Source: Macrostomum lignano (Eukaryota). From it: a DNA stretch of 64,000 nt. Of this stretch, positions 925 through 45,895 are shown one piece after another. The notes under the pieces are model-generated. The model was not told the DNA's origin, ran no database searches, and saw nothing but the letters and a program-made list of their open reading frames with translations. The position numbers and the translations under genes are program-made. The stretch is taken from the NCBI GenBank assembly GCA_002269645.1, contig NIVC01000376.1:663598-727597 (forward strand). Direction: 5' to 3'. Each line of letters opens with the position of its first letter. The first letter of the stretch is position 1.

Positions 925-3900
925 TCAGCCGATCTGGCCAGATGCCTGTGTCGCCCCTGCCCGGCCCTGAAGCGCCGTCCGTCCGACGGTGCCGAGTCGC
1001 CGCAGCCGCCGCCGGGCCGCCCAGTAGCCGCGCCATCGCTCGAAGTCGCCGGCACGCCCGCCCGCCTTGGCGAACTCCTCAGTGGAGAAGCTCGGGTCCG
1101 GCTGGACAGTGACGCACCAGCTCAGCGGAGCCGCGCTTGCCTCCTCCGCTACTTCAGCATCTACAGCGTCCTCTTCATCTTCAAGGTCGTCATCGTCGTC
1201 CTTGCCGCCAACTGAGAGCTCACCGGATGCCAGGCTGCCCAGAGCTCCTTGAATATCGGCAGCAGAGGGCGCCAGTGGGGTCAGCCTGAAGGGATTCAAC
1301 GAGCGGAGAAGCTCGGAAAATCCGGACACAGCGTCGCCGAAGACCAGGTAGGTGCCCGGGCGGAGGCGACGCTTGCTTTCCAACGCGGCGGCGACAACGT
1401 AGCGCGCTTTCAGACGACGTCGAAGCGTGCGCGCCGGCATCCGATCAGTGTGGGCGCCGTCCAGCAGCAGTCGGCCGGTGCGCGGCTCCCACACGGGCGG
1501 ATAGGCGCCTACCAGGCCGCAGCTGGCTCGGACAGAGCGCCACAGTGTTCCAGTTGCGTGTGCCACCGCCTGGGCCACCACCAGGTCGGTGCTGACCGCT
1601 ACAAACGGCAGCCAGAGATCCTCGGCCTGACGGTGATCGCCGAACAGTTGCCGGAGGGAGGCGTTGAGCTCCGCTCCGGTGTAAGTTGCCACCAGCGGCA
1701 GCGTTAGGTCGCGCAAGCGAGACCAGCGCGAGTCGATGCGCGCCCAGTGGCGCTGCAAGCCGGCTCGAGTGGCGCCAATGTCGCCTTCGTGCAGCGCCCA
1801 GGCCGCGGCGGTGAGCGCGCCGAGGCCGCTCCCAGCGATCATATCGACTGCGACGCCGTCGGACAGCAGAGCTTCCAGAACGCCGAAGTTGGCCAGACCG
1901 CGGGGCACCGCGCTGCCGAAGGCGAGGCCGACCCCGACGCCGGTGACGCAGCGGGTCAGGCGGGCGAGATCCGAGTGGGAGCTGATCCAGCTGGCCAACT
2001 CAGGCTGCTGTGCGGCCGACTGCGCTGCTGGTTTTGCAGCAGAGCCTTCGGGCTTTGGCTTGTAACGCCCTGTGCTGTAGCGCACATGGTACACGCGTCG
2101 AGCCCACCACCTGGTAATTGACAAAAATTTACTACTCATATCAGTAGGACGCTTGCAGCTTGCGATAGAAGGGAGTCAAGTTTTGAATCGTGCACTCTAC
2201 CAGGGGTTTAGGTCAGCGCCTTTAAACTCCTGAATTATCTCTAGACTAAATGTCGATTCAGGGTGCAAGTTGAATGAAAATCACCGACGTGTGGAAAACT
2301 CGAAAACTGAAATTACCTTCGCCGTCGGAGAAAGCGCAGCGAAGTGCCCTCCGGCACTGGACGCAGGGTCAGTGGGTGAAACACTGCCACGTGTACCCGA
2401 CTAAGATGCATCTTAGTCGCATCTTTCTAAGAGAGTAGAAATTTTCTGCTTTGCTCGGCACCTCGCCGCTCGCGTCAGCTCCAGCCACGTCCGAGTCGCA
2501 GCACACGACTAGACAGTCGAGAAAGCCGAGCACCATCCGGGTCCACCGGGTCACCGGACCGGTGCTGACTAGCACTAAGACGGAGAAGGCCAGCTCCAGG
2601 TCCTCCAGCCAGTTGCGCAGCGCCGCATCGGGCAGCTGATCAGCCGGACGGCCAAAGTGCCGCTCGACGTCGGTTTCCGACACAACCATGGCAGTGTCAG
2701 TGCCATGGGCTGCGTCCAGACAGAGCTGGAGGTGATGCAGCAGCTCGTTCAGGTTGAACCGTGTCGGATCAACCAGACGGGATCGGTTTCGCCGTCGCTG
2801 CCTCGTCAGCCAAGCAGTCACATGCGCAACTGGCTTCTCGTCTTCATCTGGCGCGTAGCCAAGGTCGTCGTCGTTGTTTTCTTTGAATCCATTGTCGCTT
2901 GCGTCACGACGGCAAACCCGAAGCCGCGTTTGTTTCCGGCGTTGGAGCCGCGTCAGCCGCTGCTGCTGACGGTCGAGCTGGGCCTCGCACATGCTGCCCA
3001 ACAGGCGGTCAAGGATGTTCAGCCTACGAGTATTGGAGACCCAAGCCCGAGCCAGGCTGAGCGGCAGTGAGACGGCGCGAGACTCGCGAACGGCCACAAT
3101 GTCACCGGACCAGCATGTGCTGACGGCGCTGCTCTCCATCAAGCCTTCAATCAGGCCGGCGCAGTCGCCGCGAGTAAACTCGGTGCTACCGTCGCGTCGA
3201 AGACGACCGCTGACAACGATCTCTACTGTTTCTGTGGGATCACCTTTTCGAACCAGATGATCTCCTCGGTGAAGCCTTCGATTGTTAATGAGCGTGTCGT
3301 AGAGAAACACCTGACGAGTCAGTTGACGCAGCAAGAAGCTAACGGCGGCCTCCGAAGAGGATTCTGTCGCTTTCGGGGATCTGAATTTCGGTTTTAATGT
3401 TTTGAAAGGCTTAATTGTTTGAATCTAGCACAAATCTACAGAGCTGCATAAGTATGTATGTCTTTACAAATACATTCTCAGAAATTTATAATTGGATAAA
3501 ATTCTGAATGCAGCTAAAAATTTAGTACAAGAATACATTTATACCATGTCTACATGAAACTTTTGCTTACAAATTAGCCGATGGGCTCCCTCAAAAATAA
3601 AATAAACCTGAACATCTCGTCCATCAAAGCGTCGGAAATGATGACTAAAACGACGCCGCCTCCGCCGCCGCCACCGCCAACGACGCCGCTGCCATCGCGT
3701 TTCGCATCATCTTCGTCATCAGCATCGTCGACAGCCGGTCGCACCAGGAATGGCAGTCGACTTTGCGCAAAGTACGGGACAAGACCGACCCAGCCTGGCA
3801 GAACGCTGCTGCTTCCCTGGCTGACGCCAAGCGTGGCCTGAGTTGGCGTGGTCTCCAGGCGTCCTTCCAGCACCAGGAAGGCGCGAAAACCGTCCAGAGC

Positions 3901-5799: not shown

Positions 5800-7225
5800 T
5801 TGCATCATCCATCAGCGCGTTAAAACTCTGCCGGCAGAGATTGCCTGCGAAAGGGTGGCAATCGCCAAAGCAAGTAGCTCGAGAGCCTCTTGACCCGCTT
5901 CGGCAAAGGTGCGGGGCCAGTCAGGGCGGTCCGCCAGTACGTCCTGCAGCGTTATCTTCGTTGGGGAAGAAAGAGGCTCGTCTAGTTGCCCGAAGGAACC
6001 GGACGAGCCGTGAGATGTTCTCGGGTCTGCAAACGTCATCGATGGATGGGTTTGGACCGAGGTGGTTTAGCTGCTCCCTAGTGAAGAACGGGCATTGACA
6101 GACGAAATGCTGAGCATCTTCGTTGTCGTACTCGCAAAAGAGGCTCACTTCATTCCGGATGTCGCCCCGGAGGAAGCAGTGCCTAGCGAAGCAGCCATAA
6201 CCCGTGAGGGTCATAGCAAGAGCTCGGATGTCCTTCCTGCTTTGGTTCAGGAGGACAGTTCGGAGCTTTCGAGATGGACGAGGGACCGCCCCACGTGATT
6301 GTCGGCAGGTGGTGAGGTTCATCCATCTGTCCCTGTGCAGGGCGGAGGCCCAGGCATCAATGCTGCGATTGATGATGGCCGCAGGGATCGGAGCCAAGGG
6401 CAGGGGTCCCTGGAGGGAGCCGCCACTTCCTTGTTTTGCAAGCGAGTCGGCCAGCTCGTTTCCAGGGAAGCCCGCGTGACCTGGGATCCATTTGACCTGG
6501 ACGGCATTTTTGCGTCCCAGCGTATTGAGCATCCGGACGCAGTCGGAGACCGTCCGGGAGGCCGTAGTGGTGTGACAGAGGGCTAGCAGAGCAGTCTGAC
6601 TGTCGGAGCGAAAAACTATATTTCCGGAGGTGTTTTTGGTGCACAGCTCTGCAGCGCAGGAGCTAATAGCAAGGACCTCGTTCTGGAAGACAGTAGAGAG
6701 TCTTCCAGTGTGCTGGGCATGCGTGGCGAGCACGCGGCCATTGGTGAGAATGCAGACCCCAAAGCCGGAGAGGCCATCTTTTAGGGATCCGTCTGTGTAG
6801 CAGTGGACCTCCTGGGGATTCCAGTGGTTGTTTGCCTCCTCTCGGGGAGGAAGACTGACCTTGAATCAAAGACAAAGGTTGAGCGTGCGAGGTTCCCCGT
6901 CCGAGAGGACGTTGAGGCTGCCGCTCTCCTGCAAATCTTTGAGACAAAGGTCGGAGTGAGGCAGATGCTTGCGCTTAGCCATTGCCCTCTGGGGCTTGAG
7001 AGTGATGCCGGTGTCGATGAGACGCCGGGCAGCTTTTTCTGCCTCACTGCGGACGAAAATGTCCAGCGGAGGCAGGTCAAGGAAAGCGTTGAGGCTGTCA
7101 AAGGGAGCAGAGGGCGGGGCACTCATGAGCACGCCCCTGCACTCGTTTAAGAGCCTCGAAGCAGGTCTTAATCTGCAGGGCACTGGCCCAGGCTCGAGAG
7201 CCTCATGTCCAACTGCTACTTGATG
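5800..7225 (-). mobile_element. 5'-truncated, disrupted non-LTR retrotransposon (RNase H plus C-terminal CCHC; R1/Loa-like)
   Basis: ORF 6733-5921 has RNase H motifs SDSQTAL and WIPGHAGFPGNELADSLAK, followed by a CxxC-like...HxxxxC knuckle (LFCEYDNEDAQHFVCQCP). Upstream frames contain a post-RT LNAFLDLPPLDIF segment. Frameshifts and stops separate the pieces. Confidence 0.9.
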
Positions 7226-10800: not shown

Positions 10801-12283
10801 TGCATAATACGTAAAGGCCCAGAAAATGGGGGAATGGAAAGGCAGGCACACTGAGTTATGCAGGGAAGCAAACGAAGGAAGAGTTGTCTGCCCTTGAACT
10901 GCAAAAAAGTGCAGAACACAACAAATCGTTCAATTTATCAATTATGTTTGGTATGGCTATCGGAGAAAGTGGGAAAGCAATAAAAAATATACTCTGTTCT
11001 GAGCTGATCAATCTCGTGTCTGACAGCATAGAATAGAAAATTAAGGTTGGGATAATTTTCCATGACATTTGTTGCTCTGGATCTCGTTCTCGTTGAAGGG
11101 CGATCTCGAATGCTTGAGAGAGGGCTTTAACAAGGAAAGATGCTTCTGTGCAAACCCAGTGTGTAAAATCCGAGTCTATAGGACTCTACATGTAGGTACA
11201 ATTGTATACTTTAGCCTAACTTTAGACTTAAGTATATAAAAACGCATCGCGTCGTAATCCATCGATGTATATCTCAATGTACAAAAGTACAAAAGTACAA
11301 AAGTACATATTTGTCAGCGACGCCGATAGACGGGATATTCGTGTGCCAGTCGGGTGAATTTTTATGTTTTTTAGCCATCACATTTAGCCATCTCGAGCGT
11401 TACATATACTATAAATTTTTGTAATTGATGTGTAAGTAAAATTTGAGTATATACTCAGCAACATTGAAAAGTCGCCACCCTTTGCCCCAGTAGGCAGTGT
11501 CTTTTGACCAGCGTCTATCACCCGGCCAACCATTTTGATAATAAAAAATGCTTGAAAAAACAATGAAAACCGATTGGAAGCTTCAATCCGATCTTCGCCC
11601 TCCGCTCTTCCCAATCCCTCCTCACCCAGCCTAACTCTGCGTTGCGTGGCGCAAATTGCGTCACTCAAAAGTCGATACTGAGCTGGAATCTACTGCGCAC
11701 TCTCAAAGGTGCCGACTTTTTAATGTTGTTGAGTATATTTTAGTAGTTATGCCGTCAATTCTGTCGATTTTAGTTTGAGCTATCGATATATTTGTTATTT
11801 GAAAAAAATCTTCTTTCATCAAATTTACCAGACTGAAAACCGTCCAATATTAAACAGTGGAGATTAGTTCATTTTTCTCTGTTTCTTGTTCCGCTGCCTC
11901 TTAGCAAAACAGTGCTTTCTGGTACCTCACAAAGTCATGGACGATTGCTAGAAGGGCTTCGACTTCAGCTGAGAAAATATTTCATCACTATTTCTAGGGA
12001 TTCTATCGCGTGACAATTTCAACGAAACAAACGAATTCCGAACTGAAGTTGGTAGATTGCGTTGAATACTTTGAGAGGCTTCCGTTGTAATTCATTCTGA
12101 CACTGTATTCATAAATAGCTCAGTAAAGACGGAACGCAAGTAAACCGGCAACTTTTATTTGCAAGAACAAAAAGTGTCTATTAAAGTTCAATTTATTGCA
12201 ACGGATTTTCAGATTGAAAGCGGGCATCAAAGTATCTGTTGGGGAGGCCGAAGTTCGTAAACTTTTTTTTCTGCAGAATTCCG

Positions 12284-12601
12284 TCATCCAAACCGCGGCC
12301 GGCTCATGGAGTTCAGGTAGCGGCGCAGGCTCGACAGGTACCGAGCAGCTTCAGCAGCGGATCGAAACTCGCCACTGGAGCCGAGGCTTCGCTTGCCGAA
12401 TTGCGGTCTCGGCACCGAGTGAACGTGGCGATCCAGGTAAGCCAGGTACTTGGCAACTTCCTCAATCGAGCCAAGGCTCTGCAGCCTCGGGGACGGCGGT
12501 TGCGGCGACCGTTTCACCGGGAAGAGAGACGAGCCGGAGGCCGTCAGAATCAAACAGAAGCTGCAGATGACGGCAAACCGAACTGATGTCCTGCCGATCA
12601 T
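12284..12601 (-). CDS. Neuropeptide F/Y-family precursor with two tandem amidated peptides (…RPQF-amide and …RPRF-amide)
   Basis: Signal peptide (MIGRTSVRFAVICSFCLILTASG), KR, 37-aa peptide 1 ending PRPQF-GKR, then 33-aa peptide 2 ending SRPRF-G-stop. Peptide 2 has Tyr 10 and 17 residues from its C-terminus, as in NPY/NPF. Two minus-strand AATAAA signals follow at 12192-12197 and 12154-12159. Confidence 0.9.
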   Translation of the reverse strand: MIGRTSVRFAVICSFCLILTASGSSLFPVKRSPQPPSPRLQSLGSIEEVAKYLAYLDRHVHSVPRPQFGKRSLGSSGEFRSAAEAARYLSSLRRYLNSMSRPRFG

Positions 12602-12680
12602 TTTCGATGCTTATTTAAAAGCGACTGTTTATCTTTAAAGAAAAAATATTTCGTCAAGCTCGATGTGGCGAGAAGAAAAG

Positions 12681-12688
12681 TGACGTCA
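12681..12688. promoter_or_regulatory. Perfect CRE palindrome TGACGTCA 80 bp upstream of the neuropeptide ATG
   Basis: Exact 8-mer seen in sequence. Function is inferred only. Confidence 0.4.
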
Positions 12689-13930: not shown

Positions 13931-16900
13931 CTAAACAAAGTCTGATCTTTGCTTATTGTTGAAACATTCGCAGGCTCCAGCCGTCGCGATCGTAGCAGCT
14001 TCAGCGTTCAGGGCCGTATCGCTGAAAGGAATTTCCTGCTGCAGATGCTGCTGCTCCGGTTGAGTTACTGCTGGCTCCTCATTGGATGAAGCGGCTCGTC
14101 GATTCGACAGACGGCTCTGCCAATGCACCGCCAGCTTGATGAGCAGTTCCAGGACCTCGACAAGCCACACCAAGGTCAGGCCGATCCACATGGACAGCAG
14201 GCCACCGATCTGACTAAGCGTGGAGGCCAGAGTGCGCACCGGTTTGTCAACAATCTGCAGCACCGTGAAGTCTTTGCGACTGATGCGCAGCGTCAGGAGA
14301 CTGCGGGACACCAGCTTGTTGCTGATCACCAGCTTGGCGGCTTCGGTCTGAGCAAAGCAATCGGGCGGATGATGAAATAGAAGTCTTTGGGGCTGTGACA
14401 GTGCTAATTTGCTGATAACTCACAGTTAGTTGCTTTAAAGGGAAGCTTCCTTGTGCTTCAAAAGAGAAAAAAATAGTCTCAACAATAAACACCTACAATT
14501 TTCTGATTGCCCAAGGTTGTTCCTACCTTTGAAAGCGTAAAGTAATGAGCAAGCAGAGCAAAAAGTTATTTCAGCAAGTCAAAGACAAAGACGCTGAGAT
14601 GAAGACAAAAGAGGCTCGATGGAGACACAGACATCTTTTCAGCTAAATGAAGACTATTTTAGGTAATACCTACCTATGATTTCCATTTTGAGCATTTTGA
14701 GTACAACTGGTATATCCATATAGACACCGAAAACAGAAGTGACTACTCTTGAGTAGTTAATCACGGAAATGATAGAAAAAATTTGATTTTAATTTTTGTA
14801 CTTTTATGAATTACGAACGAACTTGCAGCCATAGGGAGGCGGGGTGGCGCATACACATTGCGGCCCACTTACTTCACAAAACGTATCTAAGCTTGTACTC
14901 ACTCTGCTAGAACCTTTAGCCCGGACAACATCCTCGTACATCTGCTTCACTGTCGCGTATGCTTGCCTGGCTGGATTGTTGAGAATTGAGTGGTTTCGAG
15001 ATCGATTCGGATCTTCAAACTCGTACTCGGGGCCGTGTTGCAGCAGCGGCAGCAGCTCGCTCTCGAACAAGTGCAGCTGCATAGAGTCTCGCGGCCACAG
15101 GGCCTGAGTAGTGGACACCTCGTAGGTGAGGTAGTTGCACGGCAGAGGGCAATGATAGTCCACCTGTTGGTCAAGCGGTTACAGAAGAACAAAGTATTTT
15201 CTGAGCTAAGAAAATCGATCAGGCCTAAAGCACTGTGTATAAAATTTCTAACGTCAAAAGATCTTAAGGACCTAGGACTGAGGACCTGAGGACCTAAATT
15301 GTAAATCAAAACTACTCTAATTGACCCATGAAGGTGCTCTCCCGTCCGCTTGCGCTTTGGAGGCACAGCATCAATGTCACTGGAAAGGTTCACTAAAAAT
15401 ATTCACTAATCTCCCATAAAGACCCGAATTCAAAAGTGATTTACATCTCGAAATGAACCCAGAAGGCCGCAGCGGGTTCGCTTTGTTGTCTGCACCAACC
15501 CCCGGAGGCTGAATGAGTTGAAATCGCCGTCTAGTCGTTCGCACATGGCAGACGCATTGCCCTTGGAGTAGAGCATTGAGGCCAGCGTGCAGCCGCACTC
15601 TCGCTCGATGTACTCCTGGTGATGCAGGCGCTTGCAGGCGTCGATGGAGTAGGCAAAATTGCGGCCGAAGATGTGCAGATGCGGTGGCACTCTGTGATGG
15701 CACTCTCCGTAGGGCCTCGGCAGTCGAGTCCAGTTGACGCTGGTGAAGCGAACCTCGGTCAGCGTGCCGGGGTACACGTTGAAGCCAAGCTTTGTAACAT
15801 CCGGGAAGCTGCCTTGCTCATGCAATACTACCCTGGCGCCCATGATCTGCGTGTTCGGATCGATGGTCATGCAGTCGTCGCAGCCGATGCTGAGCTCGTG
15901 GCCCAGGTAAAGCAGCATCTCCATCTCGATGACAGGATAACTGGTATTAACGCTGAAAGTGTAGCAATTGAGCCGGCTCTGATCGTGCACTTGACGCCAG
16001 CTGCCAACTGCCTGACAGCGAGGACTGCTCATGGGCAGCTCACTGGAGCCGTCTCTATATTTTTCAGCATCTGGGCGCAAAACAGTAAGAAAACAGCTGC
16101 GAACCTGCGTTGGAAGTTTAAAAAAATTGTGAAAGTTACGTTAGATATCTGGTCAAGATAATTAAGTCACTGTTGACGTTTACAAGTTGCCAACAGTTAC
16201 GAAAGTTAGGCAACTTTAGGCAACGAAAGTTGGTTAGGAATTTATTTTCATATCACTTCTCGATAAGACAGACCTAAAGTTCACACTCATCAGTTTCGGG
16301 TTTATCAGGTTCGAGCGTTTATAACCATCCAGTAATTGCATCCGGTATTGATTTTAATGCGTTTGAAATATTGAAACTGACCAGCTGATTCAGGGTGAAG
16401 CCTAAATCTGACGGCTCGTGCCCGGCCGGTATGTTGGAGAAGTAGCTGTTCAGCGAGAAGAAACCGGCCATGTAGGGACTCAGCTGCTTCCAGTCTTCCC
16501 GGCTGATGTTCTTCAGCCTGCTCAGCTGTTTGGCCGCCTGCTTCACTGCGGCCCAATAGTCTCGAGGAGCTCGCCAGCCGTGCCGGTAGATGGTCTCGCG
16601 GCCTTGCAAAGACAGAGGCACCTGGTTGCACACCGTGATCGACGGGAACTGAGCGTCCAAGCGGTGCACGTGGCTTGGCATCTGGACGACATCGAAAGCC
16701 AAGTAGAGGTTGATGATCTGCTGCAGGTTGATGGCGCAGCCGATCATCAGGGCGGCCACGAACACCAGCCAGAGGATCTGGTAGCGCCGGCTGTCTGCAC
16801 TGACAATGCGAGGTATGCCGCGCAGACTGGTGTTGCGGCAGAAGCGCAGCAGGATGTCTCTGGCGCGCTCGCTCTGTCCCACTCGGGAGTTTTGATCGGC

Positions 16901-17026
16901 CTGCATCTCGGCGCGCTTCACCGATCGCGTTTGATGGTCGGTGCAGTCGGACTTCGTGCGAGGACCCGGGTGGATTTTTAGATACGACCAGTTTTCAACA
17001 ACTCTCCCATCAGAGATCTTTCTCAT
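13931..17026 (-). CDS. DEG/ENaC (amiloride-sensitive sodium channel family) subunit, 4 exons, about 660 aa
   Basis: Exons 17026-16382, 16104-15445, 15163-14903 and 14347-13931 are each multiples of 3 with GT-AG phase-0 introns. Motifs: FCRNTSLRGIPRI, TM1, FPSITVCN, LNCYTF, GARVVLH, PRPYGEC, YSIDAC...CGC, CPLPC...Y, and TM2 LSQIGGLLSMWIGLT. Confidence 0.93.
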
Positions 17027-18008
17027 TTCAGTAATTTATTTTCGTCACAAATTTAGAGTCCGGGAGGCGGCGTGCCTTGGCCGCGGGACAGGATATAGTA
17101 ATAGGCTGCTGATCTGCATTGAGCCGCGTCAGCTACTAAAACTGCAACTGATCACGCAGGCAGGACTGATTCAGCTTGCAGGGACCGCCTCCCCAATTGC
17201 TCTATCTCCTCCCTCATTCTCTCGCTAGCCGGCATTGATCTGAAAATGACTGCAATAATCTGCCTCCCCTTAGGCCTCTATCGTTCATAAAAAAAGTTTT
17301 TTGTCCAACCCGATCATCCGCATTAGTATGCCGTATCTCATTGCCTCATCGCTTTTGATTCCCGACCCAGCGATGTAGGGGGAGGGGGCGTTGATCATCA
17401 GTTTGATCTCCACCAGTTGGAAATGATTGATATGCAAGAGACCGCAGCTAATTACCCCTCCCCTCTCTGACAAGGTCAAAGCCAAAATGCTATTCCAATT
17501 TGTTTTTGCTTCTGTTAGAGTTCTCATAATTATCTTTTTTGACTTTTGCTAGAGGACTTCTCAAAGAGAATGTCAAATCTAATGGGTTTCCAAGTTAGTT
17601 CGAGGGCGAGCTGGACCGTGTGGTGATATTTGCTAAATAATGTCTCCAAATTTCTGTGTTTGCGCTCTGGCAGCTTAGGAAAATCAACTGCAGCAAGGGC
17701 AGGGCAGACAGGGGGGAGGGTAGAGGGGAGCCGAGTTTGAGTGGAATGAAGCAAATTGAAGCCAGAGAGAGGTAAGCTGTAACAGAGTGCCTAACGTGCC
17801 TCGGGGAGGGGCATTGAAGCCCAGCTGTTTTGCGGAGCGAATCGATTGGGTGGGTAGGCCAGTAGGTAGCGCTAACGCCAGATGGCCAAGCTGCATGGAG
17901 TATGACAGGCCTCCATGCCGGGAGGTACCTGGTTGGTAGCTAATTATTTATCATGTTCTGAGAAACGCCATTCGGGTGTTGAGCAGGCATGCGAAAGATT
18001 GTTATACA

Positions 18009-21480
<3,472 letters not shown>

Positions 21481-23985: not shown

Positions 23986-24596
23986 AAAAGTTGCAAGCTT
24001 TACCTCTATAAAGCGAGCGTTGTCAACATCCTAGAGAGCTTATCCCCTAAGATACGTGTAGAATGCATGCAATTAGTAATCAGATACGTGAGACCAAAAC
24101 GCAGTTAATAAGCATTCGTTGATGAATCAACAGTAATAAACCTATACGCTAATTGGCCGATTTTGACAACAATCTGCCATTAGCCTATTATTGATGATCT
24201 GCACATCTATAAATATTTTATTGGGTCTAATTGCGGGCCAAGACTCATTAGAATCTCATTGACGACTTCAGTTAATTGCAAACATATGCATAATTAGACC
24301 GACGAAACTGAGCAGTTTGAGCTGTTAAAATTATGAGTCGTTTGTCCCAGAAAGATTCAGGAGTGCTTAGAGCATCTGAGCTGCTCGTCTGGTCAAATTC
24401 ATTTGAGGCTTGTACACGAATTTATTATTTTTATACGAGGGTATCACGAGCCGTACAATTGCCTTTAATTGAATCTCCGTACTGAATGCAATATCGCTAG
24501 CTACCTTCCTACAGACCTATAGTTTCTATTATTAGCAACAAAAATCAGCAAGTAGTTATGGGTCTGGTCTTACCTGTCCTGCGCCTTCGTACTGTA

Positions 24597-25322
<726 letters not shown>

Positions 25323-25639
25323 GCTCTCGGAGTAAAAATCTCAGTGTCAAACTGCTGACGACTGTGATAGCTGCTTTAGTGTCGTGAGAAAAGGTTTGAA
25401 TGAAGTGCCCCCCACACCCCCTATTGTTCGCGGCAAGATGCCTAAGAGCTATTTCTCTATGTACTTAATTTTGAGGGACTCGCTAAAACTCAGGAGCGGG
25501 CGACCACTTTGGCCTTTGCTGTCTCAGCGTTGAAAAAAGAAGAATTTTAACTAGCTCAAAGAGAAAAGTTTCATGAGCCTTGAAATTGATCGATGCAAGG
25601 AGTGGTGGTTGCAAGTTAAGTGTTTAAAAAAATTGAAAG

Positions 25640-25930
25640 CACAGAGAGAGGGACGTGAGAGAGGGAGAGGCAGGATAGGAGAGGGAGAGGGAGAGGTGAG
25701 AGAGGGATGAGAGAGTGCGAGAGTCAGGAGAGGGGAAGAGAGTGGTAGAGGTGAGAGTGGGGTGAGAGTGCGAGAGTCAGGAGAGGGGAAGAGAGTGGTA
25801 GAGGTGAGAGAGAGAGAGGGATCAGAGAGTGGGAGAGTCAGGAGAGGGGAAGAGAGTGGTAGAGGTGAGAGAGGGATGAGAGAGTGGGAGAGTCAGGAGA
25901 GGGGAAGAGAGTGGTAGAAAGGAGAAAGGT
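25640..25930. repeat. Purine-rich degenerate tandem repeat (gagagtcaggagaggggaagagagtggtagaggt)
   Basis: About four diverged copies are visible. Confidence 0.8.
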
Positions 25931-26631
25931 GAGAAGAGGTTGCAGGGCCGAGTCTGTGCCAGAGCCGCATACCGCTGTTAAGAATAATGCCGAGCACACT
26001 CCAAGCAGTCCCACCCAGAAGGGGTGGGGGCAGAAGAGGGCAGAGTTGAGAAAACGCAGAGAGAAATCTCAAGCTGTTTGCTTTTAGGCTGCTTAGCCAT
26101 GTGAGCAATTTTCGAATGGCCGACAGCGGAGAATGCTAAAGCAAACTATTCCTTAAAAATTGGCCTCCAAAAATAGAAGAGAGGCCAGCGTTGGCCTTGT
26201 TTGGACAGCAGGCATGCAAGTGGGGGACGTGTAGACGTGTAGACCTGAGCACTGAAGCGTTTGAGAGACGGCGATCTAATTTGAGGCTCTGAGATTTGCG
26301 CGCTAAAGGCATTAGTAAGCAATTATTCAATGTATTGGACTATGCGGCAAAGTAAGGCGGCCCTTTCCTCTCAACGTGCCCTGATCTGAATTTGCAGGGT
26401 TAGATACGCCTGCAGGCTTCAGTGGCCCATAGACTATGCTGTTCGGTTCAGTGCGAATCTGGAATGCAAGACTGGCTGACTCATGGACCCCTGCACCGAG
26501 CCAGTCATAGTAATTAACATTGGTACTTCATTAAATAATTAATAGCGCTACCAGTAATCAATGCAAAACTGCCGCTAAAAAACTAATGGCATCCAATTAC
26601 ACATGGCTCGTGACGTGGAATGACTATGATT

Positions 26632-27360
<729 letters not shown>

Positions 27361-27801
27361 GGTCTTTATGCTCTCTCCACGTTCGGTACTCACTATATGA
27401 GCCATGGAGCAGGCTGATCCTGAGACTAACATGTTCTTGAGTTGCCTGGACTCCTAAAGCAAGAAGCGACAGTCTACCTGACATTCCGTACTCAAGCATA
27501 GACTGAGTTTCTCGATCCAAGCAGTCAACATATGGCTGGCTCGATTTGGCTTATTGGCAGTCACGCGCTCAAGTACTTTCTTGAGCTTTGGCCTTCCTTC
27601 CAGCCCGATCGATTCTGTCTCTCCACTTGGCGACTTAACGTCGAACCTCTCTGTATCTGCGTTAGAACAGTGCTCTGAATAGATTCTACCAAAATCGATA
27701 ATTTCGACACTCGCCGCGTTTTCGTCCTGCTGAGTCCAGTCTTTAAGAGGGCAAAAGTATTTCCCAAAATCATGATACGAGCTGCTATACATTCATTTAG
27801 C

Positions 27802-28775
<974 letters not shown>

Positions 28776-35169: not shown

Positions 35170-35400
35170 GGAACAACAGCACAATAATAATAACAATAAT
35201 AATAACAATAATAATGATATTATTAATATTTAAAACAACAACAACAACAACGGCAAAAACTAAAACAACAATAATGACAACAATAACAACAGCAACAAAA
35301 ATAACAACAGCAACAACAATAACAACAAAAACAATAATAACAACAATAACAACAGCAACAAGAATAATAGCAACAACAATAGCAACAGCAACAACAACTG
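35170..35400. repeat. Compound (AAC/AAT/AGC)n trinucleotide tract abutting the 5' end of the LINE
   Basis: Direct reading. Confidence 0.95.
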
Positions 35401-38400
35401 CTGGAATCGACCACAGAGAGAATCCCAGTATCGAGCAATGGCTGAAGCCGCATGCCAGAGAGATCATTCTGGGCTACTTCAACCTACACCACCCCAAATG
35501 GGGTAGCCAGCCAGATCAAGGACCGGAAAGCACTGCTCAAGCTCACGCCCTGCTGCAGTGGTGTGATGCCTTCGACTACACCATTCTTAATTCGGGCGAA
35601 CCTACCTGCCTCGACCGCAGAAGCGGAGGCGAAAGTGTGCCGGACATCAGCCTGGCCACCACCAATATCGCTGATAAATGCTTCTGGGAAGCCCTCAGCG
35701 AACTCGGCTCCGACCACAAACCTATTCTTCTCAGCCTTCAAGAGGACTGCAGTGTCGTGAAAACCGTGCCGCGCTTTACTTGGTCCTGGAAGAAAGCTGA
35801 CTGGACCAGCTACCAAAACCACCTGCTGAGCAGGAGCGGCAACCTTAACAGAGGCACTATCAAACAACAAATCAAAAGTCTCACCGATACCATCATCAAA
35901 GCCGCGGAAGGCAGTATCCTCAAAAAGAAGATCTCCAGAGCCAATAAGCCCTACTGGGACGCCCAGCTTGAGGAACTGCGGGATGAGAGAAATGCGATCA
36001 GGAGAACAGGAGGTAACCACCAAGAGCTGAAGACCAAAAACTCCGAACTTCACAAACTGTGTGCCGAGAAGAAAGCTGAGTTCTGGAAAGAATATGTGAA
36101 CTCGCTGCATAACTACTCGGATGTCAAAAGAGTCTGGCAGACCATCAAGACCCTCAGCACTGGAGAGAAAAGCAACGCCCGTAACGAAGTGCTAAATGCC
36201 TACGGGAAAGAGTGTCGCACAGACCGCGAGAAAGCTGACGCATTCGGAAGACATTATGCCAGCATCAGTAAACTGCAGCACAAGGGAGATGACCGGCGAT
36301 TCAAAGTCCACACTGCCAAACGGCTCAAGGAATATGAAACCTACGACGCGTACGGAAACAACTTTACTCAGGGCGAACTGCAAAGGGGTCTGGATCGACT
36401 GGAGACCGATAAAAAATGTGGACCAGACAGGATCGAGGTAGCCTTTTTTAAGCATCTTCCCGACTCGTGGTGGGCCGCCTGGCTTACGGTCTTTAACCGG
36501 TTTGGCGCCTGGGCCACTGCCCGGGAATTTGGAAAAAGGCCGTCATTATCCCTCTCCTCAAGGATGGTAAAGACCCTAAGGACTGTGCCAGCTTCCGGCC
36601 AGTCAGCCTGACCTCCATCTGTGTCAAAATCATGGAGCGCATGGTCCTGGATCGGCGTCTTCATTGGATGGAAAACAACAAGATCCTACAACCATTCTTT
36701 CAAAGAAGAAGGGGCTGCGAGGAACAAGTGGCTAGACTTGTGCAGGAAATTCAAAACGGATGGGAAGCCCGCAGACATCTTAAAATCATCGCTGTTACTC
36801 TCGATTGCTCCAAAGCTTTCGACCGGGTTTGGAGAACGCTTCTGATTGCCATCCTCATGGACCAGAAGGTGCCATCTCGAATGGTACACTGGTTTGCCAG
36901 TTTTCTCGAGGGTCGGCAAATCGCTGTCAGAGTCGGTGACACGCTTGGTAAATGGAGACCTCTGTGCGAAGGAGTTCCACAGGGAGCTGTCAGTTTGCCT
37001 GTTCTCTTTTTGCTCTACATCAATGTCTGGAAAGACTGGCTGGTGCCCCACATCAACTATGGAGGCTTCGCGGATGACCTCAGCATCTGGGCCTCAGACG
37101 CCGACCTCGGCGTCGTCAAGGAACGCATACAAGAAGCTCTCCACAAAATAGAGGAATGGGCCAGCCACCTTCGCATCGAGATCAATCCTAGTAAAACCGA
37201 GAGCTGCCTATTCTCGCGTGATCCCAGAGACAAAAACTGACAACTCGATCTCAGCATCCTCAACCAAAGAATCCCTACTAACAAGACCATCAAATACGAG
37301 TACATGGAAGTCTGGATCGATCAGGACTTGCTGTTTCGAACTCACTGCGATTCTGTGATTGCTAACATCAAAAGAAGAACAGCTGTCATTCGGGCTTTGT
37401 TCAATCGTGAATGGGGATGGAGTCTCCCTGCTCTGAGGAGCGTCTACAAAGCCGTTGTTGAGGCAGTTGTCTGGCATGCCGCTGCTGCCTGGATGCCGTG
37501 GCTCTCCAACACCCGCCTCGACGCCCTTGATCGAGCCCAAAAAGAGGCCTTACGGCTGCTGACCGGATTGCCCAAGTCTACCCATCCACCTCGAAGCGGG
37601 ATGCGAGCCAATCAGCATCGAAGCCAAAAGGTGTGTACTCCTCTCAGTTGAGAAAGCCCTGAGAAGACCACCCGAGGACCCTTGGCGTCAAGTCTGCGAA
37701 AGGAACACCAACATCAGACTCAAGGCCAATCGCGGACTTCGGGAACAAGCCAACAACATTCTTAGACACCTGCTCCCTGACGTTCGCAGGCCATGCGATT
37801 GGACGCGCCTGGAATCGTGGCGGAACCTCAAGGAGTTGGGAGTCCATCTTCACCTGCAACTGATCGATCAGCTGGACATCAACCAACAGACCAACATCCG
37901 CAAGACCATCGACAGGCATCAAGTTGAGTGCACCTACTTCACGGACCGCAGAGGTTGCGAGAATGGCGGCTCCGCGTGGATCCTGCTGGACGCCTACTCG
38001 GGTAGGACGCCTACCCAATCCGTACTGGAAGACAGCCCGCGGGTAGGCGGTGCAACTCGTTCGAATCTGAGCTTATCGCTCTCCTGCATTTTCTGGCCGG
38101 GCTCCGCCTGCATTTTCACCGATAGCCAATCAGCCGTGAGAGCTCTGTGTTCCGATCAGCCGACCATGAACCCGCTGCTCAGGGGGCCATAGCCCAGCGG
38201 TAGCGCAGCTGCTCTGGTGTGCCAGCGACCCAGGCTCGATTCCAAGTGCAGTCACATTAATTTGGGGCTAAATTGGAATCTCGGCTTGGCTCTGCTCGTG
38301 CAATTAACGGCCTTGAGAGCCAACCCCCAAGGCGCAGTGAAGTGTACATGCCTAACGATAAAATAAAGTTAGGGCCGCTGTACACTCCTGTGTGAGTGTG

Positions 38401-44225: not shown

Positions 44226-45464
44226 TTACGGTCTGAGGTCAACCATTCGAAAACTGTTCGAGTAGTCCATTTGAGGCCTCGGCTGGAGCTGAATCTGCTG
44301 CCGCTGGCGCTGCCTTTGCCTGCTGCGAAACTGGTTCTGGCGTCGGCGACGTCGACCAGCCCGAGTTCGTCTCAGCACCGCCATTCGAAAGGTCCGACTG
44401 GCGTACATGTAGATGAAGAAGTTGCAGGTGGAGTCCAGGTTGACGCAAAAGTTGCTCACGTCAAGCGCGTAGGCCATGAAGGCGTCCCAGAACTGGCTCT
44501 GCTCCGGCAGCTGCGTGCCCAGCAGCACCACTAGGAAGGAGGGCGACTCCAGGCAGACGAAGGCGGCCAGGAGGGCCCGCACCATCCGCGTGGCCTTGCT
44601 GCAGTAGCGGGAGGCGCTCCCCGCCTGACGGCGCAGCGCCAGCGTCATGGCAACAGATGCGATGGCCACTAGGCAGACTGGCAGCACCGCCTGGGCCACT
44701 AGGGAGGCCAGCCAGAACTCCGCGTAGAATGGAAGCGGCTGCCGCTTCAGCTTGGCCACGATCTGGCCGGTGGCTGGGCAGTAGGCGAAGGCCTCCTGGA
44801 ACATCTTGGGCAGCGCGAAGCCAAGCCCGACCGCCACCATGCAGGCGTGCGCCAGCAGAATTCTTCGTCGACGGCTCGAGCAGAGGCAGCGGAAAAAGCG
44901 TCGAAAGACTCCAGAGCCGCAGCGGCCACCGCCTCCGCCAGCATCGTCTCCTTCTTCGTCGCCGCTGTCGTCAACGCCGAGGCCAGAGGAGCGAGCGAAC
45001 GGCTGCAGGACCACCTGGCAGCGAGCCAAGGCAATGGATACCACGCACCAGTTTCTGGTGAGCAGGAAGGCATTGGCAAACAGCCAGCCGATGGACAGGA
45101 AGGCCACGAGGCCGCTGGCTGCCCCGGGCGATGCGTAGCTGACATGCGAGCGCAGGACCTCAGTGAGCAGGCGGGCGAGCTCAACGCTGGTCATGCCGGA
45201 GACGGCGAACATCTCCGCCGAGCTGAGCAGCAGCAGCAGCAGGCGGACCGTGGGGTCTCTGTGCGGGTGCCGCAGGAATACCAGCAGGCTGATTCCGTTC
45301 AGGGCCAAGTTGACCAGTCCGACCACCACGAAGAGGGCCTTCAGAGCAATGCGAGGTCCGGATACGCCGCCAGCTGCCGCAGCGTCCTTGCTGACCGAGT
45401 AGGGGTAGGTGTCATTGTCGTCCAGGTTGGAACAATTGTCCCGCAGGAGCACCAGCTCAAACAT
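44226..45464 (-). CDS. Intronless class A (rhodopsin-like) orphan GPCR, peptide-receptor-like
   Basis: Seven hydrophobic segments: TM1 GLVNLALN, TM3 TRNWCVVSIALARC, TM6 VCLESP and TM7 NLDSTCNFFIY. The probable ATG is at 45464, preceded by an acceptor-like ctgcag. The N-terminus has an N-glycosylation sequon. Confidence 0.9.
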   Translation of the reverse strand: MFELVLLRDNCSNLDDNDTYPYSVSKDAAAAGGVSGPRIALKALFVVVGLVNLALNGISLLVFLRHPHRDPTVRLLLLLLSSAEMFAVSGMTSVELARLLTEVLRSHVSYASPGAASGLVAFLSIGWLFANAFLLTRNWCVVSIALARCQVVLQPFARSSGLGVDDSGDEEGDDAGGGGGRCGSGVFRRFFRCLCSSRRRRILLAHACMVAVGLGFALPKMFQEAFAYCPATGQIVAKLKRQPLPFYAEFWLASLVAQAVLPVCLVAIASVAMTLALRRQAGSASRYCSKATRMVRALLAAFVCLESPSFLVVLLGTQLPEQSQFWDAFMAYALDVSNFCVNLDSTCNFFIYMYASRTFRMAVLRRTRAGRRRRRQNQFRSRQRQRQRQQIQLQPRPQMDYSNSFRMVDLRP

Positions 45465-45895
45465 GCCTGCAGTTGGCTTGACAACTTGGACAATAAATAT
45501 TTTTACGCTCGTAACTAGCTCGATATGCCTTTTCCGTAGCTGAGCGTCGAACGTCGAGAGCGGAACTCGAAGAAGAATTATAAAGAGGGAGTCGGAGTGA
45601 GTGCGGGCAAAAGACTTGGTTTCTGGCACGGCCTGTGATTGGTTGAAATTCGCAGAGCTTTGAGACTCGCTGGATAGGGAAAGGAGGCATCAAGGGCAGA
45701 TTTACGGGAGTCTGTTTCAGTAACGTAAGCAGCTACTACAGTTTTTATATGAAATCCATTGTGAAAATCGCACCAGCATATTGACGTCAGGATCGAATGG
45801 GTCACATGACATTAGATAATTCATAGAAGTTAAGTTTATTAATGCTATCAAAGTGCTTTGCATCTAAATTTACCAGTCATGTAAGATATACACAC

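What the first reader, a model, noticed from the sequence alone, without database searches (positions are those of the whole stretch)
12284..12601. One precursor, two NPY/NPF-like peptides, one with a non-canonical RPQF-amide end
Seen: signal peptide, KR, SPQPPSPRLQSLGSIEEVAKYLAYLDRHVHSVPRPQF-GKR, then SLGSSGEFRSAAEAARYLSSLRRYLNSMSRPRF-G-stop, with no intron and no C-terminal flanking peptide. Established: NPY/NPF precursors normally carry a single peptide plus a CPON and usually have an intron in the penultimate Arg codon, a residue important for receptor activation. Peptide 1 keeps the Pro-rich N-terminus but has Gln at the penultimate position and His at the -10 aromatic position. Peptide 2 has the canonical C-terminus but no Pro-rich segment. 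Inference: an internal duplication, possibly via a retrocopy, produced co-released peptides with different receptor preference, or an agonist plus a modulator.
Basis: partly seen in the sequence, partly recalled or inferred. Interest (0 to 1): 0.8.

Follow-up and report, generated by a model that had tools for sequence, protein, structure and literature searches.

The report
Two-peptide neuropeptide F gene in Macrostomum
This is a real, single-exon neuropeptide gene of the flatworm Macrostomum lignano that encodes one standard NPY/NPF-type peptide and one divergent copy ending in RPQF. It belongs to a small family of multi-copy, intron-free NPF genes in that species, so it is a variant of a known system and not a one-off oddity.

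Summary
Window 12284..12601 (minus strand) is an uninterrupted 105-aa ORF: signal peptide, KR, a 37-aa peptide ending RPQF-GKR, then a 33-aa peptide ending RPRF-G-stop. Pfam Hormone_3 scores E=2.7e-12.

The window is M. lignano contig NIVC01000376.1. That assembly's annotation is transcript-derived and calls this CDS.

- The two units are homologous.
- The duplication is not private to this gene. M. lignano has paralogous NPF genes with 2-3 tandem peptides, all without a CDS intron. Each unit here matches a paralog unit better than it matches its sister unit.
- Nothing supports a retrocopy.
- Peptide 2 alone passes Pfam's threshold. Peptide 1 fails it, almost entirely because of His at -10 and Gln at -2.
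- RPQF is the only such ending against 165 RPRF motifs in the retrieved relatives. Other degenerate copies (RPHF, RPGF, RPWF) occur only in multi-copy precursors.

Most likely the gene is a prohormone giving a canonical NPF agonist plus a co-released divergent peptide. Whether that peptide has its own target is untested.

I found no open paper describing these genes, and McVeigh 2009 could not be read. Interest is moderate.

The parts
12284..12601 (-). Complete single-exon CDS of the 105-aa NPF-type prohormone, stop codon 12284-12286 included.
   Evidence: ORF list. Pfam Hormone_3 E=2.7e-12. Called as a gene in GCA_002269645.1 contig NIVC01000376.1.
12530..12601 (-). Predicted signal peptide (aa 1-23/24): basic n-region R4 and R8, hydrophobic core FAVICSFCLILTA, small residues A-S-G-S at the likely cleavage site.
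   Evidence: The 11-residue Kyte-Doolittle mean peaks at 2.95 over the core. The paralogs have the same layout. No dedicated predictor was run.
12509..12529 (-). Short spacer S(S)LFPV plus the dibasic KR cleavage site (aa 25-31).
   Evidence: Read directly from the translation. Cleavage is inferred from prohormone-convertase rules.
12398..12508 (-). Peptide 1 (aa 32-68, 37 aa): SPQPPSPRLQSLGSIEEVAKYLAYLDRHVHSVPRPQF. It is the divergent unit. Gln codon CAA is at 12401-12403 and His codon CAC at 12425-12427.
   Evidence: Alone it scores 15.1 bits on Hormone_3, below the 28.7 cutoff, but aligns to profile positions 2-36 of 36. With H28Y and Q36R it scores 28.6 bits. The helix is strongly amphipathic: moment 1.70, top 0.5% of shuffles. 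AF2 predicts a helix at aa 46-59 with low confidence.
12389..12397 (-). G-K-R: amidation donor Gly plus the dibasic cleavage site between the two peptides.
   Evidence: Read from the translation. F-G-K-R after the first unit is invariant across the aligned paralogs.
12290..12388 (-). Peptide 2 (aa 72-104, 33 aa): SLGSSGEFRSAAEAARYLSSLRRYLNSMSRPRF. It is the canonical NPF unit.
   Evidence: Alone it scores 39.1 bits, E=7.7e-10, on Hormone_3, above the cutoff. Its best PDB sequence matches are PP/NPY/PYY peptides. It shares 17/25 C-terminal residues with unit 2 of Mlig009822.
12287..12289 (-). Terminal Gly codon (amidation donor), followed directly by the stop codon. There is no C-terminal flanking peptide.
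12681..12688 (.). Palindromic TGACGTCA, a CRE-like motif 80-87 nt upstream of the ATG. It is a candidate regulatory site only.
   Evidence: Motif scan. It is identical in the second genomic copy. It is absent from the upstream regions of the two paralogs examined. Function was not tested.
12154..12197 (-). Two AATAAA poly(A) signals (12192-12197 and 12154-12159), 87 and 125 nt after the stop codon.
   Evidence: The paralogs have AATAAA at similar distances.

Best explanation
This is an expressed, single-exon prohormone gene of the Macrostomum lignano NPY/NPF family. The 105-aa product enters the secretory pathway through an N-terminal signal peptide. A PC2-type convertase then cuts at KR(30-31) and at GKR(69-71). 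Carboxypeptidase trims the basic residues, and peptidylglycine alpha-amidating monooxygenase converts the exposed Gly residues to amides. Two peptides are packaged and released together. One is a 33-aa canonical NPF (...YLNSMSRPRF-NH2), the likely agonist of NPF/NPY-type GPCRs. The other is a 37-aa divergent sister (...HVHSVPRPQF-NH2). The sister keeps the Pro-rich N-terminus, the amphipathic helix and all processing sites, but has lost the penultimate Arg and the Tyr at -10. It should therefore be weak or inactive at the canonical receptor. The tandem layout and the missing intron are inherited from an ancestral multi-copy, intron-free NPF gene of this lineage. Shown here: the ORF, family membership, homology of the two units, the paralog family, absence of a CDS intron, and a transcript-based annotation. 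Inferred: the cleavage sites, amidation, co-release and receptor pharmacology. For peptide 1 I lean slightly towards a processed peptide with altered pharmacology over dead filler, at roughly 55:45.
For: The ORF and motifs are. Pfam Hormone_3 gives E=2.7e-12 for the precursor and 39.1 bits for peptide 2 alone. PDB sequence hits are PP, NPY and PYY. The window is M. lignano contig NIVC01000376.1 and the CDS is called there. That GenBank annotation is built only from assembled transcripts (PMC5730564). The unit-by-unit identities place the duplication before the gene split. The KR and GKR sites and the amphipathic helix are retained in peptide 1. Reverting only H28 and Q36 restores 13.5 bits, so the rest of peptide 1 still fits the family. 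Published work shows the penultimate Arg is required for activation of NPY-type receptors, and that the two NPY-like peptides of one C. elegans precursor (flp-34) are both active with different potency (PMC6751662).
Against: I saw no direct RNA read, peptide or receptor data. The lookup by exact protein sequence found only the genome contig and no transcript contig. The near-identical second copy (L002) has a 62-nt frameshifting deletion in the signal-peptide region, so this gene lineage may be under relaxed constraint. RNA-seq reads could not easily be assigned to one copy. Peptide 1 fails the Pfam threshold on its own. RPQF occurs once against 165 RPRF motifs among relatives, which fits decay as well as new function. 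No orthologue from another species was available to test conservation.
Confidence: 0.7

Rival explanations
1. Peptide 1 has acquired a new function. RPQF-amide is a distinct signal with its own co-evolved receptor, or it acts as an antagonist or biased ligand at NPF receptors, and it is released together with the canonical NPF.
For: The processing sites, amidation Gly, amphipathic helix (top 0.5% of shuffles) and a Pro-rich N-terminus that the paralog first units lack are all retained. Peptide 1 still shares 13/25 residues with the paralog first units despite an old gene split, which suggests constraint for most of its history. Planarians have 16 NPY-type receptors, and NPYR-1 discriminates between close paralog peptides (PMC4862687). 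An atypical planarian npy-11 that lacks the terminal aromatic residue has a specific expression pattern (PMC2953531).
Against: No receptor data and no cross-species conservation are available. The variant is unique among the relatives retrieved. The Gln and His changes are each one transition away from Arg (CGA) and Tyr (TAC), so they could be recent drift.
Confidence: 0.3
2. Peptide 1 is a decaying redundant copy. It stays in frame only because it lies upstream of the functional peptide 2 in the same ORF, and it acts at most as a spacer.
For: It has lost two residues that are conserved across the family and falls below Pfam's cutoff. Sporadic degenerate ends (RPHF, RPGF, RPWF, SPRF, LPRF, HPRF) occur in other multi-copy precursors and only there, as expected under relaxed selection on extra copies. 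Peptide 1 has diverged more from the paralogs than peptide 2 has (13/25 against 17/25).
Against: Drift should also have eroded the KR and GKR sites, the Gly and the helix amphipathicity, and these are intact.
Confidence: 0.3
3. The whole locus is a redundant copy on its way to becoming a pseudogene in a recently duplicated genome, with little or no expression. The paralogous NPF genes do the signalling.
For: The sister copy on NIVC01000785.1 has already lost its signal peptide through a 62-nt frameshifting deletion and is annotated as partial. I inspected no expression data.
Against: The window copy is intact from ATG to stop. It has good start-codon context (A at -3), poly(A) signals and a transcript-derived gene model. 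The deletion in the other copy could be an assembly error.
Confidence: 0.1
4. It is a chance ORF or a sequencing artefact.
For: None, beyond the long alternative ORFs on the opposite strand that this GC-rich segment also produces.
Against: Pfam gives E=2.7e-12. There is a full secretory-prohormone grammar. Both genomic copies have the same CAA and CAC codons. Several paralogs exist.
Confidence: 0.01

Closest known systems
M. lignano paralogs Mlig007142 g1/g2 (PAA66725, PAA79627), Mlig003006g1 (PAA75755) and Mlig009822 g1-g3 (PAA66726, PAA79626, PAA75754). GenBank calls them hypothetical proteins. UniProt auto-names most of them Neuropeptide Y or Neuropeptide F and leaves Mlig003006g1 as an uncharacterized protein.
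   Same: Same species and same Pfam family. Each has a signal peptide followed by 2-3 tandem ~30-39-aa NPF units separated by GKR. The CDS has no real intron. Units correspond one to one with the window gene (43-46% identity for the precursor).
   Different: Their units end in RPRF, except one RPHF in Mlig003006g1. They have a short C-terminal tail after the last GKR. They have no KR-bounded spacer after the signal peptide and no Pro-rich SPQPPSP start. Two of them lie 8 kb apart in tandem, whereas the window gene is alone in its 64 kb. Their upstream regions differ.
Schmidtea mediterranea npy-1 to npy-11 (Collins et al. 2010, PMC2953531), with NPY-8 and its receptor NPYR-1 (Saberi et al. 2016, PMC4862687)
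   Same: They are flatworm NPY/NPF-family prohormones forming an expanded gene family. NPY-8 (PMFDSADAFRNYLRKLNNEYMIAGRPRF-NH2) resembles the M. lignano units. One atypical member, npy-11, has a non-canonical C-terminus.
   Different: No second NPY-type unit is described for them; npy-8 carries one NPF-like peptide plus a novel C-terminal peptide. Ten of the 11 keep the conserved intron inside the Arg codon before the terminal aromatic residue. The window gene has two units and no intron.
Caenorhabditis elegans flp-34 (FLP-34-1 and FLP-34-2; PMC6751662)
   Same: One precursor carries two NPY-like peptides that differ at the C-terminus (RYa and RFa). Both act on the NPY-type receptor NPR-11 with different potency, 19 nM against 0.7 nM. 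This is a precedent for co-released NPF-like sister peptides.
   Different: Both nematode peptides keep the RxR[FY] motif. None has lost the penultimate Arg. It is a different phylum, and the duplication is presumably independent.
Vertebrate NPY, PYY and pancreatic polypeptide (Pfam PF00159, PP-fold)
   Same: Length is about 36 aa, with an amphipathic helix and a C-terminal RxR[FY]-amide. Peptide 2 aligns as ARYLSSLRRYLNSMSRPRF against ARYYSALRRYINMLTRPRY. Peptide 1 has a Pro-rich N-terminus like the polyproline arm.
   Different: The vertebrate genes have one peptide per precursor, a C-terminal flanking peptide and an intron in the Arg35 codon. Peptide 1 here has Gln at position 35 and His at position 27.
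Three-unit NPF precursors annotated in the krill Meganyctiphanes norvegica (CAL4093327, CAL4116002), and multi-unit RPRF-GKR precursors in marine metatranscriptomes and one ENA contig (P0014-P0045, P0018)
   Same: They are tandem long-NPF-like units separated by GKR or GR sites in one ORF. Occasional degenerate copies occur.
   Different: They come from unrelated or unknown organisms, and the sequence identity is low (about 30%). None ends in RPQF. I did not check whether any has been described in the literature.

Membership tests
NPY/NPF family (Pfam PF00159 Hormone_3) | The profile score is above Pfam's gathering cutoff of 28.7 bits. | tested here: met
   The precursor scores 47 bits and peptide 2 alone scores 39.1 bits. 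Peptide 1 alone scores only 15.1 bits, so it fails on its own.
NPY/NPF family (Pfam PF00159 Hormone_3) | A C-terminal RxR[F/Y] motif followed by a Gly amidation donor. | tested here: met
   Peptide 2 ends RPRF-G-stop. For peptide 1 this feature is not met: it ends RPQF-GKR, the only such ending against 165 RPRF motifs in the retrieved relatives.
NPY/NPF family (Pfam PF00159 Hormone_3) | A peptide of about 36 residues with an amphipathic alpha-helix in the C-terminal two thirds. | tested here: met
   The peptides are 37 and 33 aa. AF2 predicts helices at aa 46-59 and 82-99, with low confidence (pLDDT 53.8). Hydrophobic moments are 1.70 and 1.25, against shuffle means of 0.69 and 0.62.
NPY/NPF family (Pfam PF00159 Hormone_3) | A Pro-rich N-terminal arm (the polyproline helix of the PP-fold). 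| tested here: inconclusive
   Peptide 1 has P2, P4, P5 and P7, and Pfam aligns it from profile position 2. Peptide 2 has no Pro before the RPRF. The AF2 model is too poor to show a PP-fold.
NPY/NPF family (Pfam PF00159 Hormone_3) | The conserved intron inside the codon of the penultimate Arg, as in vertebrate and planarian genes. | tested here: not met
   Both ...CCG CAA TTC GGC... and ...CCG CGG TTT GGA TGA are continuous in the genomic DNA. The intron is also absent in the M. lignano paralogs. Ten of the 11 planarian genes have it (PMC2953531).
NPY/NPF family (Pfam PF00159 Hormone_3) | The usual precursor layout: signal peptide, one peptide, GKR, then a C-terminal flanking peptide. | tested here: not met
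   There are two peptides and no flanking peptide, and the stop codon follows the Gly. A signal-peptide-like N-terminus is present.
NPY/NPF family (Pfam PF00159 Hormone_3) | Activation of an NPY/NPF-type rhodopsin GPCR. | not testable with these tools
   This needs synthetic amidated peptides and expressed M. lignano receptors.
Short multi-copy RFamide precursors (FLP or sNPF type) | Many copies of short (about 4-15 aa) xxRF-amide peptides on one precursor. | tested here: not met
   The units here are 33-37 aa and fit the long NPY profile. Only the multi-copy principle is shared. A 10-aa YLNSMSRPRFa would arise only if the RR site were cleaved, which the LRRY in the pancreatic-polypeptide sequence makes doubtful.

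The most novel reading that the evidence does not exclude
RPQF-amide is a true second signal. On this reading, a long NPF that lost the supposedly indispensable penultimate Arg has its own receptor, or acts as an endogenous antagonist, and is co-released with a canonical NPF from one intron-free precursor. A more speculative extension is that one of the two peptides gates the FaNaC-like DEG/ENaC channel encoded 1.3 kb upstream on the same strand. The two genes would then be a linked, possibly co-transcribed, ligand-channel pair.
Probability: 0.2. Interest if true: 0.65.

Novelty: new variant of a known kind. Interest (0 to 1): 0.4.

Why it matters
NPY/NPF is a textbook case of a conserved bilaterian neuropeptide, with one peptide per precursor, an RxR[F/Y]-amide end and an intron in the penultimate Arg codon. 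Planarian genes follow that layout closely. Macrostomum branches early among flatworms and is a transgenic model. Here it shows a different solution: intron-free genes carrying 2-3 tandem long NPFs whose copy number still varies between duplicated loci. One gene also has a sister peptide that lost the Arg needed for receptor activation. This offers a tractable natural experiment on how co-released sister peptides diverge, by decay or by gaining a new receptor, and on how stable the supposedly diagnostic NPY intron really is. It also matters for annotation, because the genes are labelled hypothetical proteins and the peptide units could be missed or mis-modelled. In at least one paralog a whole peptide unit has been annotated as an intron.

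Tried and rejected
- Orthologues in other species. The word-indexed protein search found only the second M. lignano copy. The exhaustive HMMER search added only M. lignano paralogs, krill proteins and two repeat-protein false positives, P0002 and P0006. No Macrostomum transcriptomes could be reached, so conservation of RPQF could not be tested.
- Transcript contigs. The lookup by exact protein sequence returned only the genome contig. Expression therefore rests on the fact that the assembly's annotation is transcript-derived.
- Literature. No open paper contains the peptide sequences or the gene IDs, and keyword searches found no description of M. lignano NPF precursors. McVeigh et al. 2009 (PMC2749192), which mined flatworm ESTs for neuropeptides, is not held, so prior description there cannot be excluded.
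- A planarian precedent for a non-Arg penultimate residue. A qPCR primer suggested NPY-8 might end in RPMF. The published peptide sequence shows that PMF is its N-terminus and that it ends in the canonical RPRF, so I rejected the idea.
- Retrocopy origin. I found no poly(A) remnant. The missing intron is shared by the whole family, and the neighbouring gene is conserved in both copies. The idea is not supported.
- Nesting inside the neighbouring DEG/ENaC gene. The channel's Pfam profile is complete (positions 1-455) between 17026 and 13931, so the NPF gene lies downstream of it and not in an intron.
- Structure. The AF2 model has mean pLDDT 53.8. That is too poor for a fold search, so none was run.
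- Other NPF-like ORFs in the window. tblastn found none.
- dN/dS. The two genomic copies differ at only three CDS positions and the paralogs are too divergent, so there is no statistical power.

Full report
**1. The observation**

The ORF list shows one ATG-initiated ORF at 12284..12601 on the minus strand. It encodes 105 aa: MIGRTSVRFAVICSFCLILTASGSSLFPVKR / SPQPPSPRLQSLGSIEEVAKYLAYLDRHVHSVPRPQF / GKR / SLGSSGEFRSAAEAARYLSSLRRYLNSMSRPRF / G / stop.

- The frame is continuous in the genomic DNA. No intron interrupts either penultimate codon, and the stop codon follows the terminal Gly.
- Pfam Hormone_3 (PF00159) matches the precursor with 47 bits, E=2.7e-12, in two stretches.
- The two units align over 25 residues with score 63. 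Two thousand shuffles gave 17.2 +/- 3.6, and none reached 63.
- The N-terminus has two Arg residues, a 13-residue hydrophobic core and small residues (A-S-G-S) at the likely cleavage site. No dedicated signal-peptide predictor was available.
- Two AATAAA signals lie 87 and 125 nt after the stop codon. The start codon has A at -3.

**2. Where it comes from and whether it is expressed**

The exact protein is called on contig NIVC01000376.1 of Macrostomum lignano assembly Mlig_3_7, GCA_002269645.1. The assembly paper states that the GenBank annotation is a filtered genome-guided transcriptome. It combined StringTie and TACO with a mapped de novo assembly, and novel low-expression transcripts were discarded (PMC5730564). 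A called CDS here therefore implies an assembled transcript.

I could not inspect reads myself, and no transcript contig with this ORF turned up.

A second genomic copy (BOX15_Mlig025228g2, annotated partial, contig NIVC01000785.1) is 99% identical in the peptide region. It has a 62-nt frameshifting deletion that removes most of the signal peptide. Its flanks are 91-99% identical to the window, as expected for the duplicated genome of this species. Both copies carry CAA (Gln) and CAC (His), so these are not sequencing errors.

**3. The wider family changes the interpretation**

An exhaustive HMMER search and cluster lookups show more M. lignano NPF genes.

| Gene | Units | Notes |
|---|---|---|
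| Mlig009822 g1-g3 | three tandem units | all end RPRF-GKR |
| Mlig007142 g1/g2 | two units as annotated | the g2 locus actually encodes three (see below) |
| Mlig003006g1 | three units | the last ends RPHF |

- Mlig009822g2 and Mlig007142g2 lie 8 kb apart on one contig.
- All have a contiguous CDS. The only annotated intron, in Mlig007142g2, is 99 nt and equals exactly one 33-aa peptide unit. The genomic ORF there reads straight through three units. Unit copy number therefore differs between loci or transcripts, and the tandem array is still changing.
- I compared C-terminal 25-residue identities. Window peptide 2 matches unit 2 of Mlig009822 best (17/25). Window peptide 1 matches the first units of both paralogs best (13/25). 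The two window units share only 11/25.
- The unit duplication therefore predates the gene duplications. It is a lineage feature and not an event in this gene.
- By contrast, 10 of 11 planarian npy genes keep the conserved intron in the Arg codon. No second NPY-type unit is described for them, and npy-8 carries one NPF-like peptide plus a novel C-terminal peptide (PMC2953531).

**4. How unusual is RPQF?**

The profile search returned 250 relatives, of which the best 120 were listed and retrieved. In the retrieved sequences I counted 165 RPRF-G motifs and a single RPQF, from this gene's second copy. The other one-residue variants are RPHF, RPGF, RPWF, SPRF, LPRF and HPRF. All of them occur in multi-copy precursors. 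That pattern fits relaxed constraint on extra copies.

- Peptide 2 alone scores 39.1 bits on Hormone_3, above the 28.7 cutoff.
- Peptide 1 alone scores 15.1 bits, but it aligns over profile positions 2-36.
- Changing only His28 to Tyr and Gln36 to Arg raises peptide 1 to 28.6 bits. Two single-transition substitutions account for nearly all of the shortfall.
- Peptide 1 keeps KR before it and GKR after it.
- Its helix is strongly amphipathic, with a hydrophobic moment in the top 0.5% of shuffles.
- It has a Pro-rich start (SPQPPSP) that the paralog first units lack.
- AF2 gives a low-confidence model (pLDDT 53.8) with helices at aa 46-59 and 82-99.

**5. Mechanism**

Shown here: a secretory-prohormone grammar, NPY/NPF family membership through peptide 2, and homology of the two units.

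Inferred from established prohormone processing: signal-peptide removal, convertase cleavage at KR and GKR, carboxypeptidase trimming and amidation. This would yield ...PRPQF-NH2 (37 aa, 4197.224 Da) and ...SRPRF-NH2 (33 aa, 3720.902 Da), packaged and released together.

Peptide 2 needs no C-terminal cleavage at all. Its RR pair also occurs in the pancreatic-polypeptide sequence ...LRRYINMLTRPRY, so it need not be a cleavage site.

Published pharmacology shows that replacing the penultimate Arg abolishes activation of NPY-type receptors in both human and C. elegans systems. It also shows that the two NPY-like peptides of C. elegans flp-34 are both active at NPR-11 with different potency (PMC6751662). 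Peptide 2 is therefore the likely agonist, and peptide 1 should be weak or inactive at the same receptor.

Whether peptide 1 has its own receptor is open.
- For a new function: planarians have 16 NPY-type receptors and discriminate between close paralog peptides (PMC4862687).
- For decay: the variant is unique, and sporadic degenerate copies occur elsewhere.
- Against decay: the processing sites and the helix are intact.

**6. Retrocopy hypothesis**

This is not supported. The missing intron is shared by all paralogs. There is no poly(A) tract beyond the poly(A) signals. The locus has its own upstream region and lies next to the same gene in both copies.

**7. Comparison and novelty**

It works like, and through peptide 2 is a member of, the NPY/NPF family. 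The precursor architecture fails two features usually treated as typical of the family: the Arg-codon intron, and the single peptide plus flanking peptide.

- The closest architectures are its own M. lignano paralogs, which carry only automatic names.
- C. elegans flp-34 is a functional precedent.
- Three-unit NPF precursors are annotated in krill, and multi-unit RPRF precursors appear in marine metatranscriptomes.
- I found no open paper with these sequences or gene IDs.
- McVeigh et al. 2009 could not be read, so prior description cannot be excluded.

I rate it a new variant of a known kind, with moderate interest of 0.4. The gene is real and the architecture deserves a note for neuropeptide evolution. 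The striking part, a functional RPQF-amide, is still untested.

**8. Context**

The nearest neighbour is a complete DEG/ENaC channel gene at about 17026 to 13931 on the same strand. It ends 1.3 kb upstream of the NPF start codon. Its first exon matches FMRFamide-gated Na+ channels best among solved structures (7yvb, E=1.1e-7). M. lignano has polycistronic, trans-spliced transcription units, and AG acceptors preceded by a pyrimidine run lie just upstream of the ATG. Co-transcription is conceivable but was not tested.

Noticed in passing
window 13931-17026 (-): A complete DEG/ENaC (Pfam ASC) channel gene in at least four exon-like ORFs covering profile positions 1-455. It is on the same strand as the NPF gene and ends 1.3 kb upstream of it. 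Its N-terminal exon matches FMRFamide-gated Na+ channels best among PDB sequences (7yvb, E=1.1e-7; 8on7). A gene for a possibly peptide-gated channel next to an RF-amide peptide gene may be coincidence. The adjacency is kept in the second genomic copy.
   Followed up: partly
L002 4970-5000 (NIVC01000785.1), equivalent to window 12510-12575: The second genomic copy of the gene (BOX15_Mlig025228g2) has a 62-nt deletion inside the signal-peptide coding region that shifts the frame. It is either a young pseudogene or an assembly error. It explains the 'partial' 74-aa annotation.
   Followed up: yes
L004 10001-10426 (NIVC01000624.1): The annotated 108-aa, two-peptide product of Mlig007142g2 needs a 99-nt intron that is exactly one 33-aa peptide repeat. 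The genomic DNA is an uninterrupted 141-aa ORF with three units. This is probably a transcript from a two-unit locus mapped onto a three-unit locus, which means the number of peptide units varies between duplicated loci.
   Followed up: partly
P0010 (Mlig003006g1, PAA75755): The third unit of this paralog ends in RPHF-GKR. It is a second M. lignano case of a non-Arg penultimate residue.
   Followed up: no
P0005, P0011-P0013 (Meganyctiphanes norvegica); P0014-P0045 (MERC/JGI marine metatranscriptomes); P0018 / L005 2001-2609 (ENA ERZ25767047): Krill gene models with three tandem long-NPF units. Many marine-plankton transcripts carry 3-5 RPRF-GKR units. One intron-free ORF on a 334-kb contig of unknown origin carries two full-length, Pro-rich NPFs. 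Multi-copy long-NPF precursors seem more widespread than the usual description of the family suggests.
   Followed up: partly
window 44226-45629 (-): A 467-aa ORF with a weak rhodopsin-family 7TM match (Pfam 7tm_1, E=2e-4; best PDB matches are PAR4 and the bradykinin B1 receptor). It is an orphan peptide-type GPCR candidate 32 kb from the NPF gene and shows no specific similarity to NPY receptors.
   Followed up: partly
window 12602-12640 (-): Just upstream of the ATG there is a pyrimidine run followed by AG (ttttttctttaaag, then ...acag and ...ataag). These could be spliced-leader trans-splice acceptors rather than a TATA box. The TTTAAATAAG at -18 is too close to the ATG to be a normal TATA box.
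   Followed up: no
window 925-3334 (-); 5921-6733 (-); 17976-18917 (+); 35214-36611 (+): Other content of the window: exons of a neuropathy-target-esterase-like gene (patatin, cNMP-binding, NTE P-loop), a retroelement RNase H fragment, a flavin-monooxygenase-like ORF, and a LINE-type endonuclease/reverse-transcriptase ORF.
   Followed up: partly
window 24001-28000: Extreme strand composition: GC skew +0.56 and AT skew +0.37 at 24-26 kb, then AT skew -0.37 at 26-28 kb. Long overlapping ORFs on both strands occur at 26.6-27.5 kb. This is probably a low-complexity or satellite-like repeat block.
   Followed up: no
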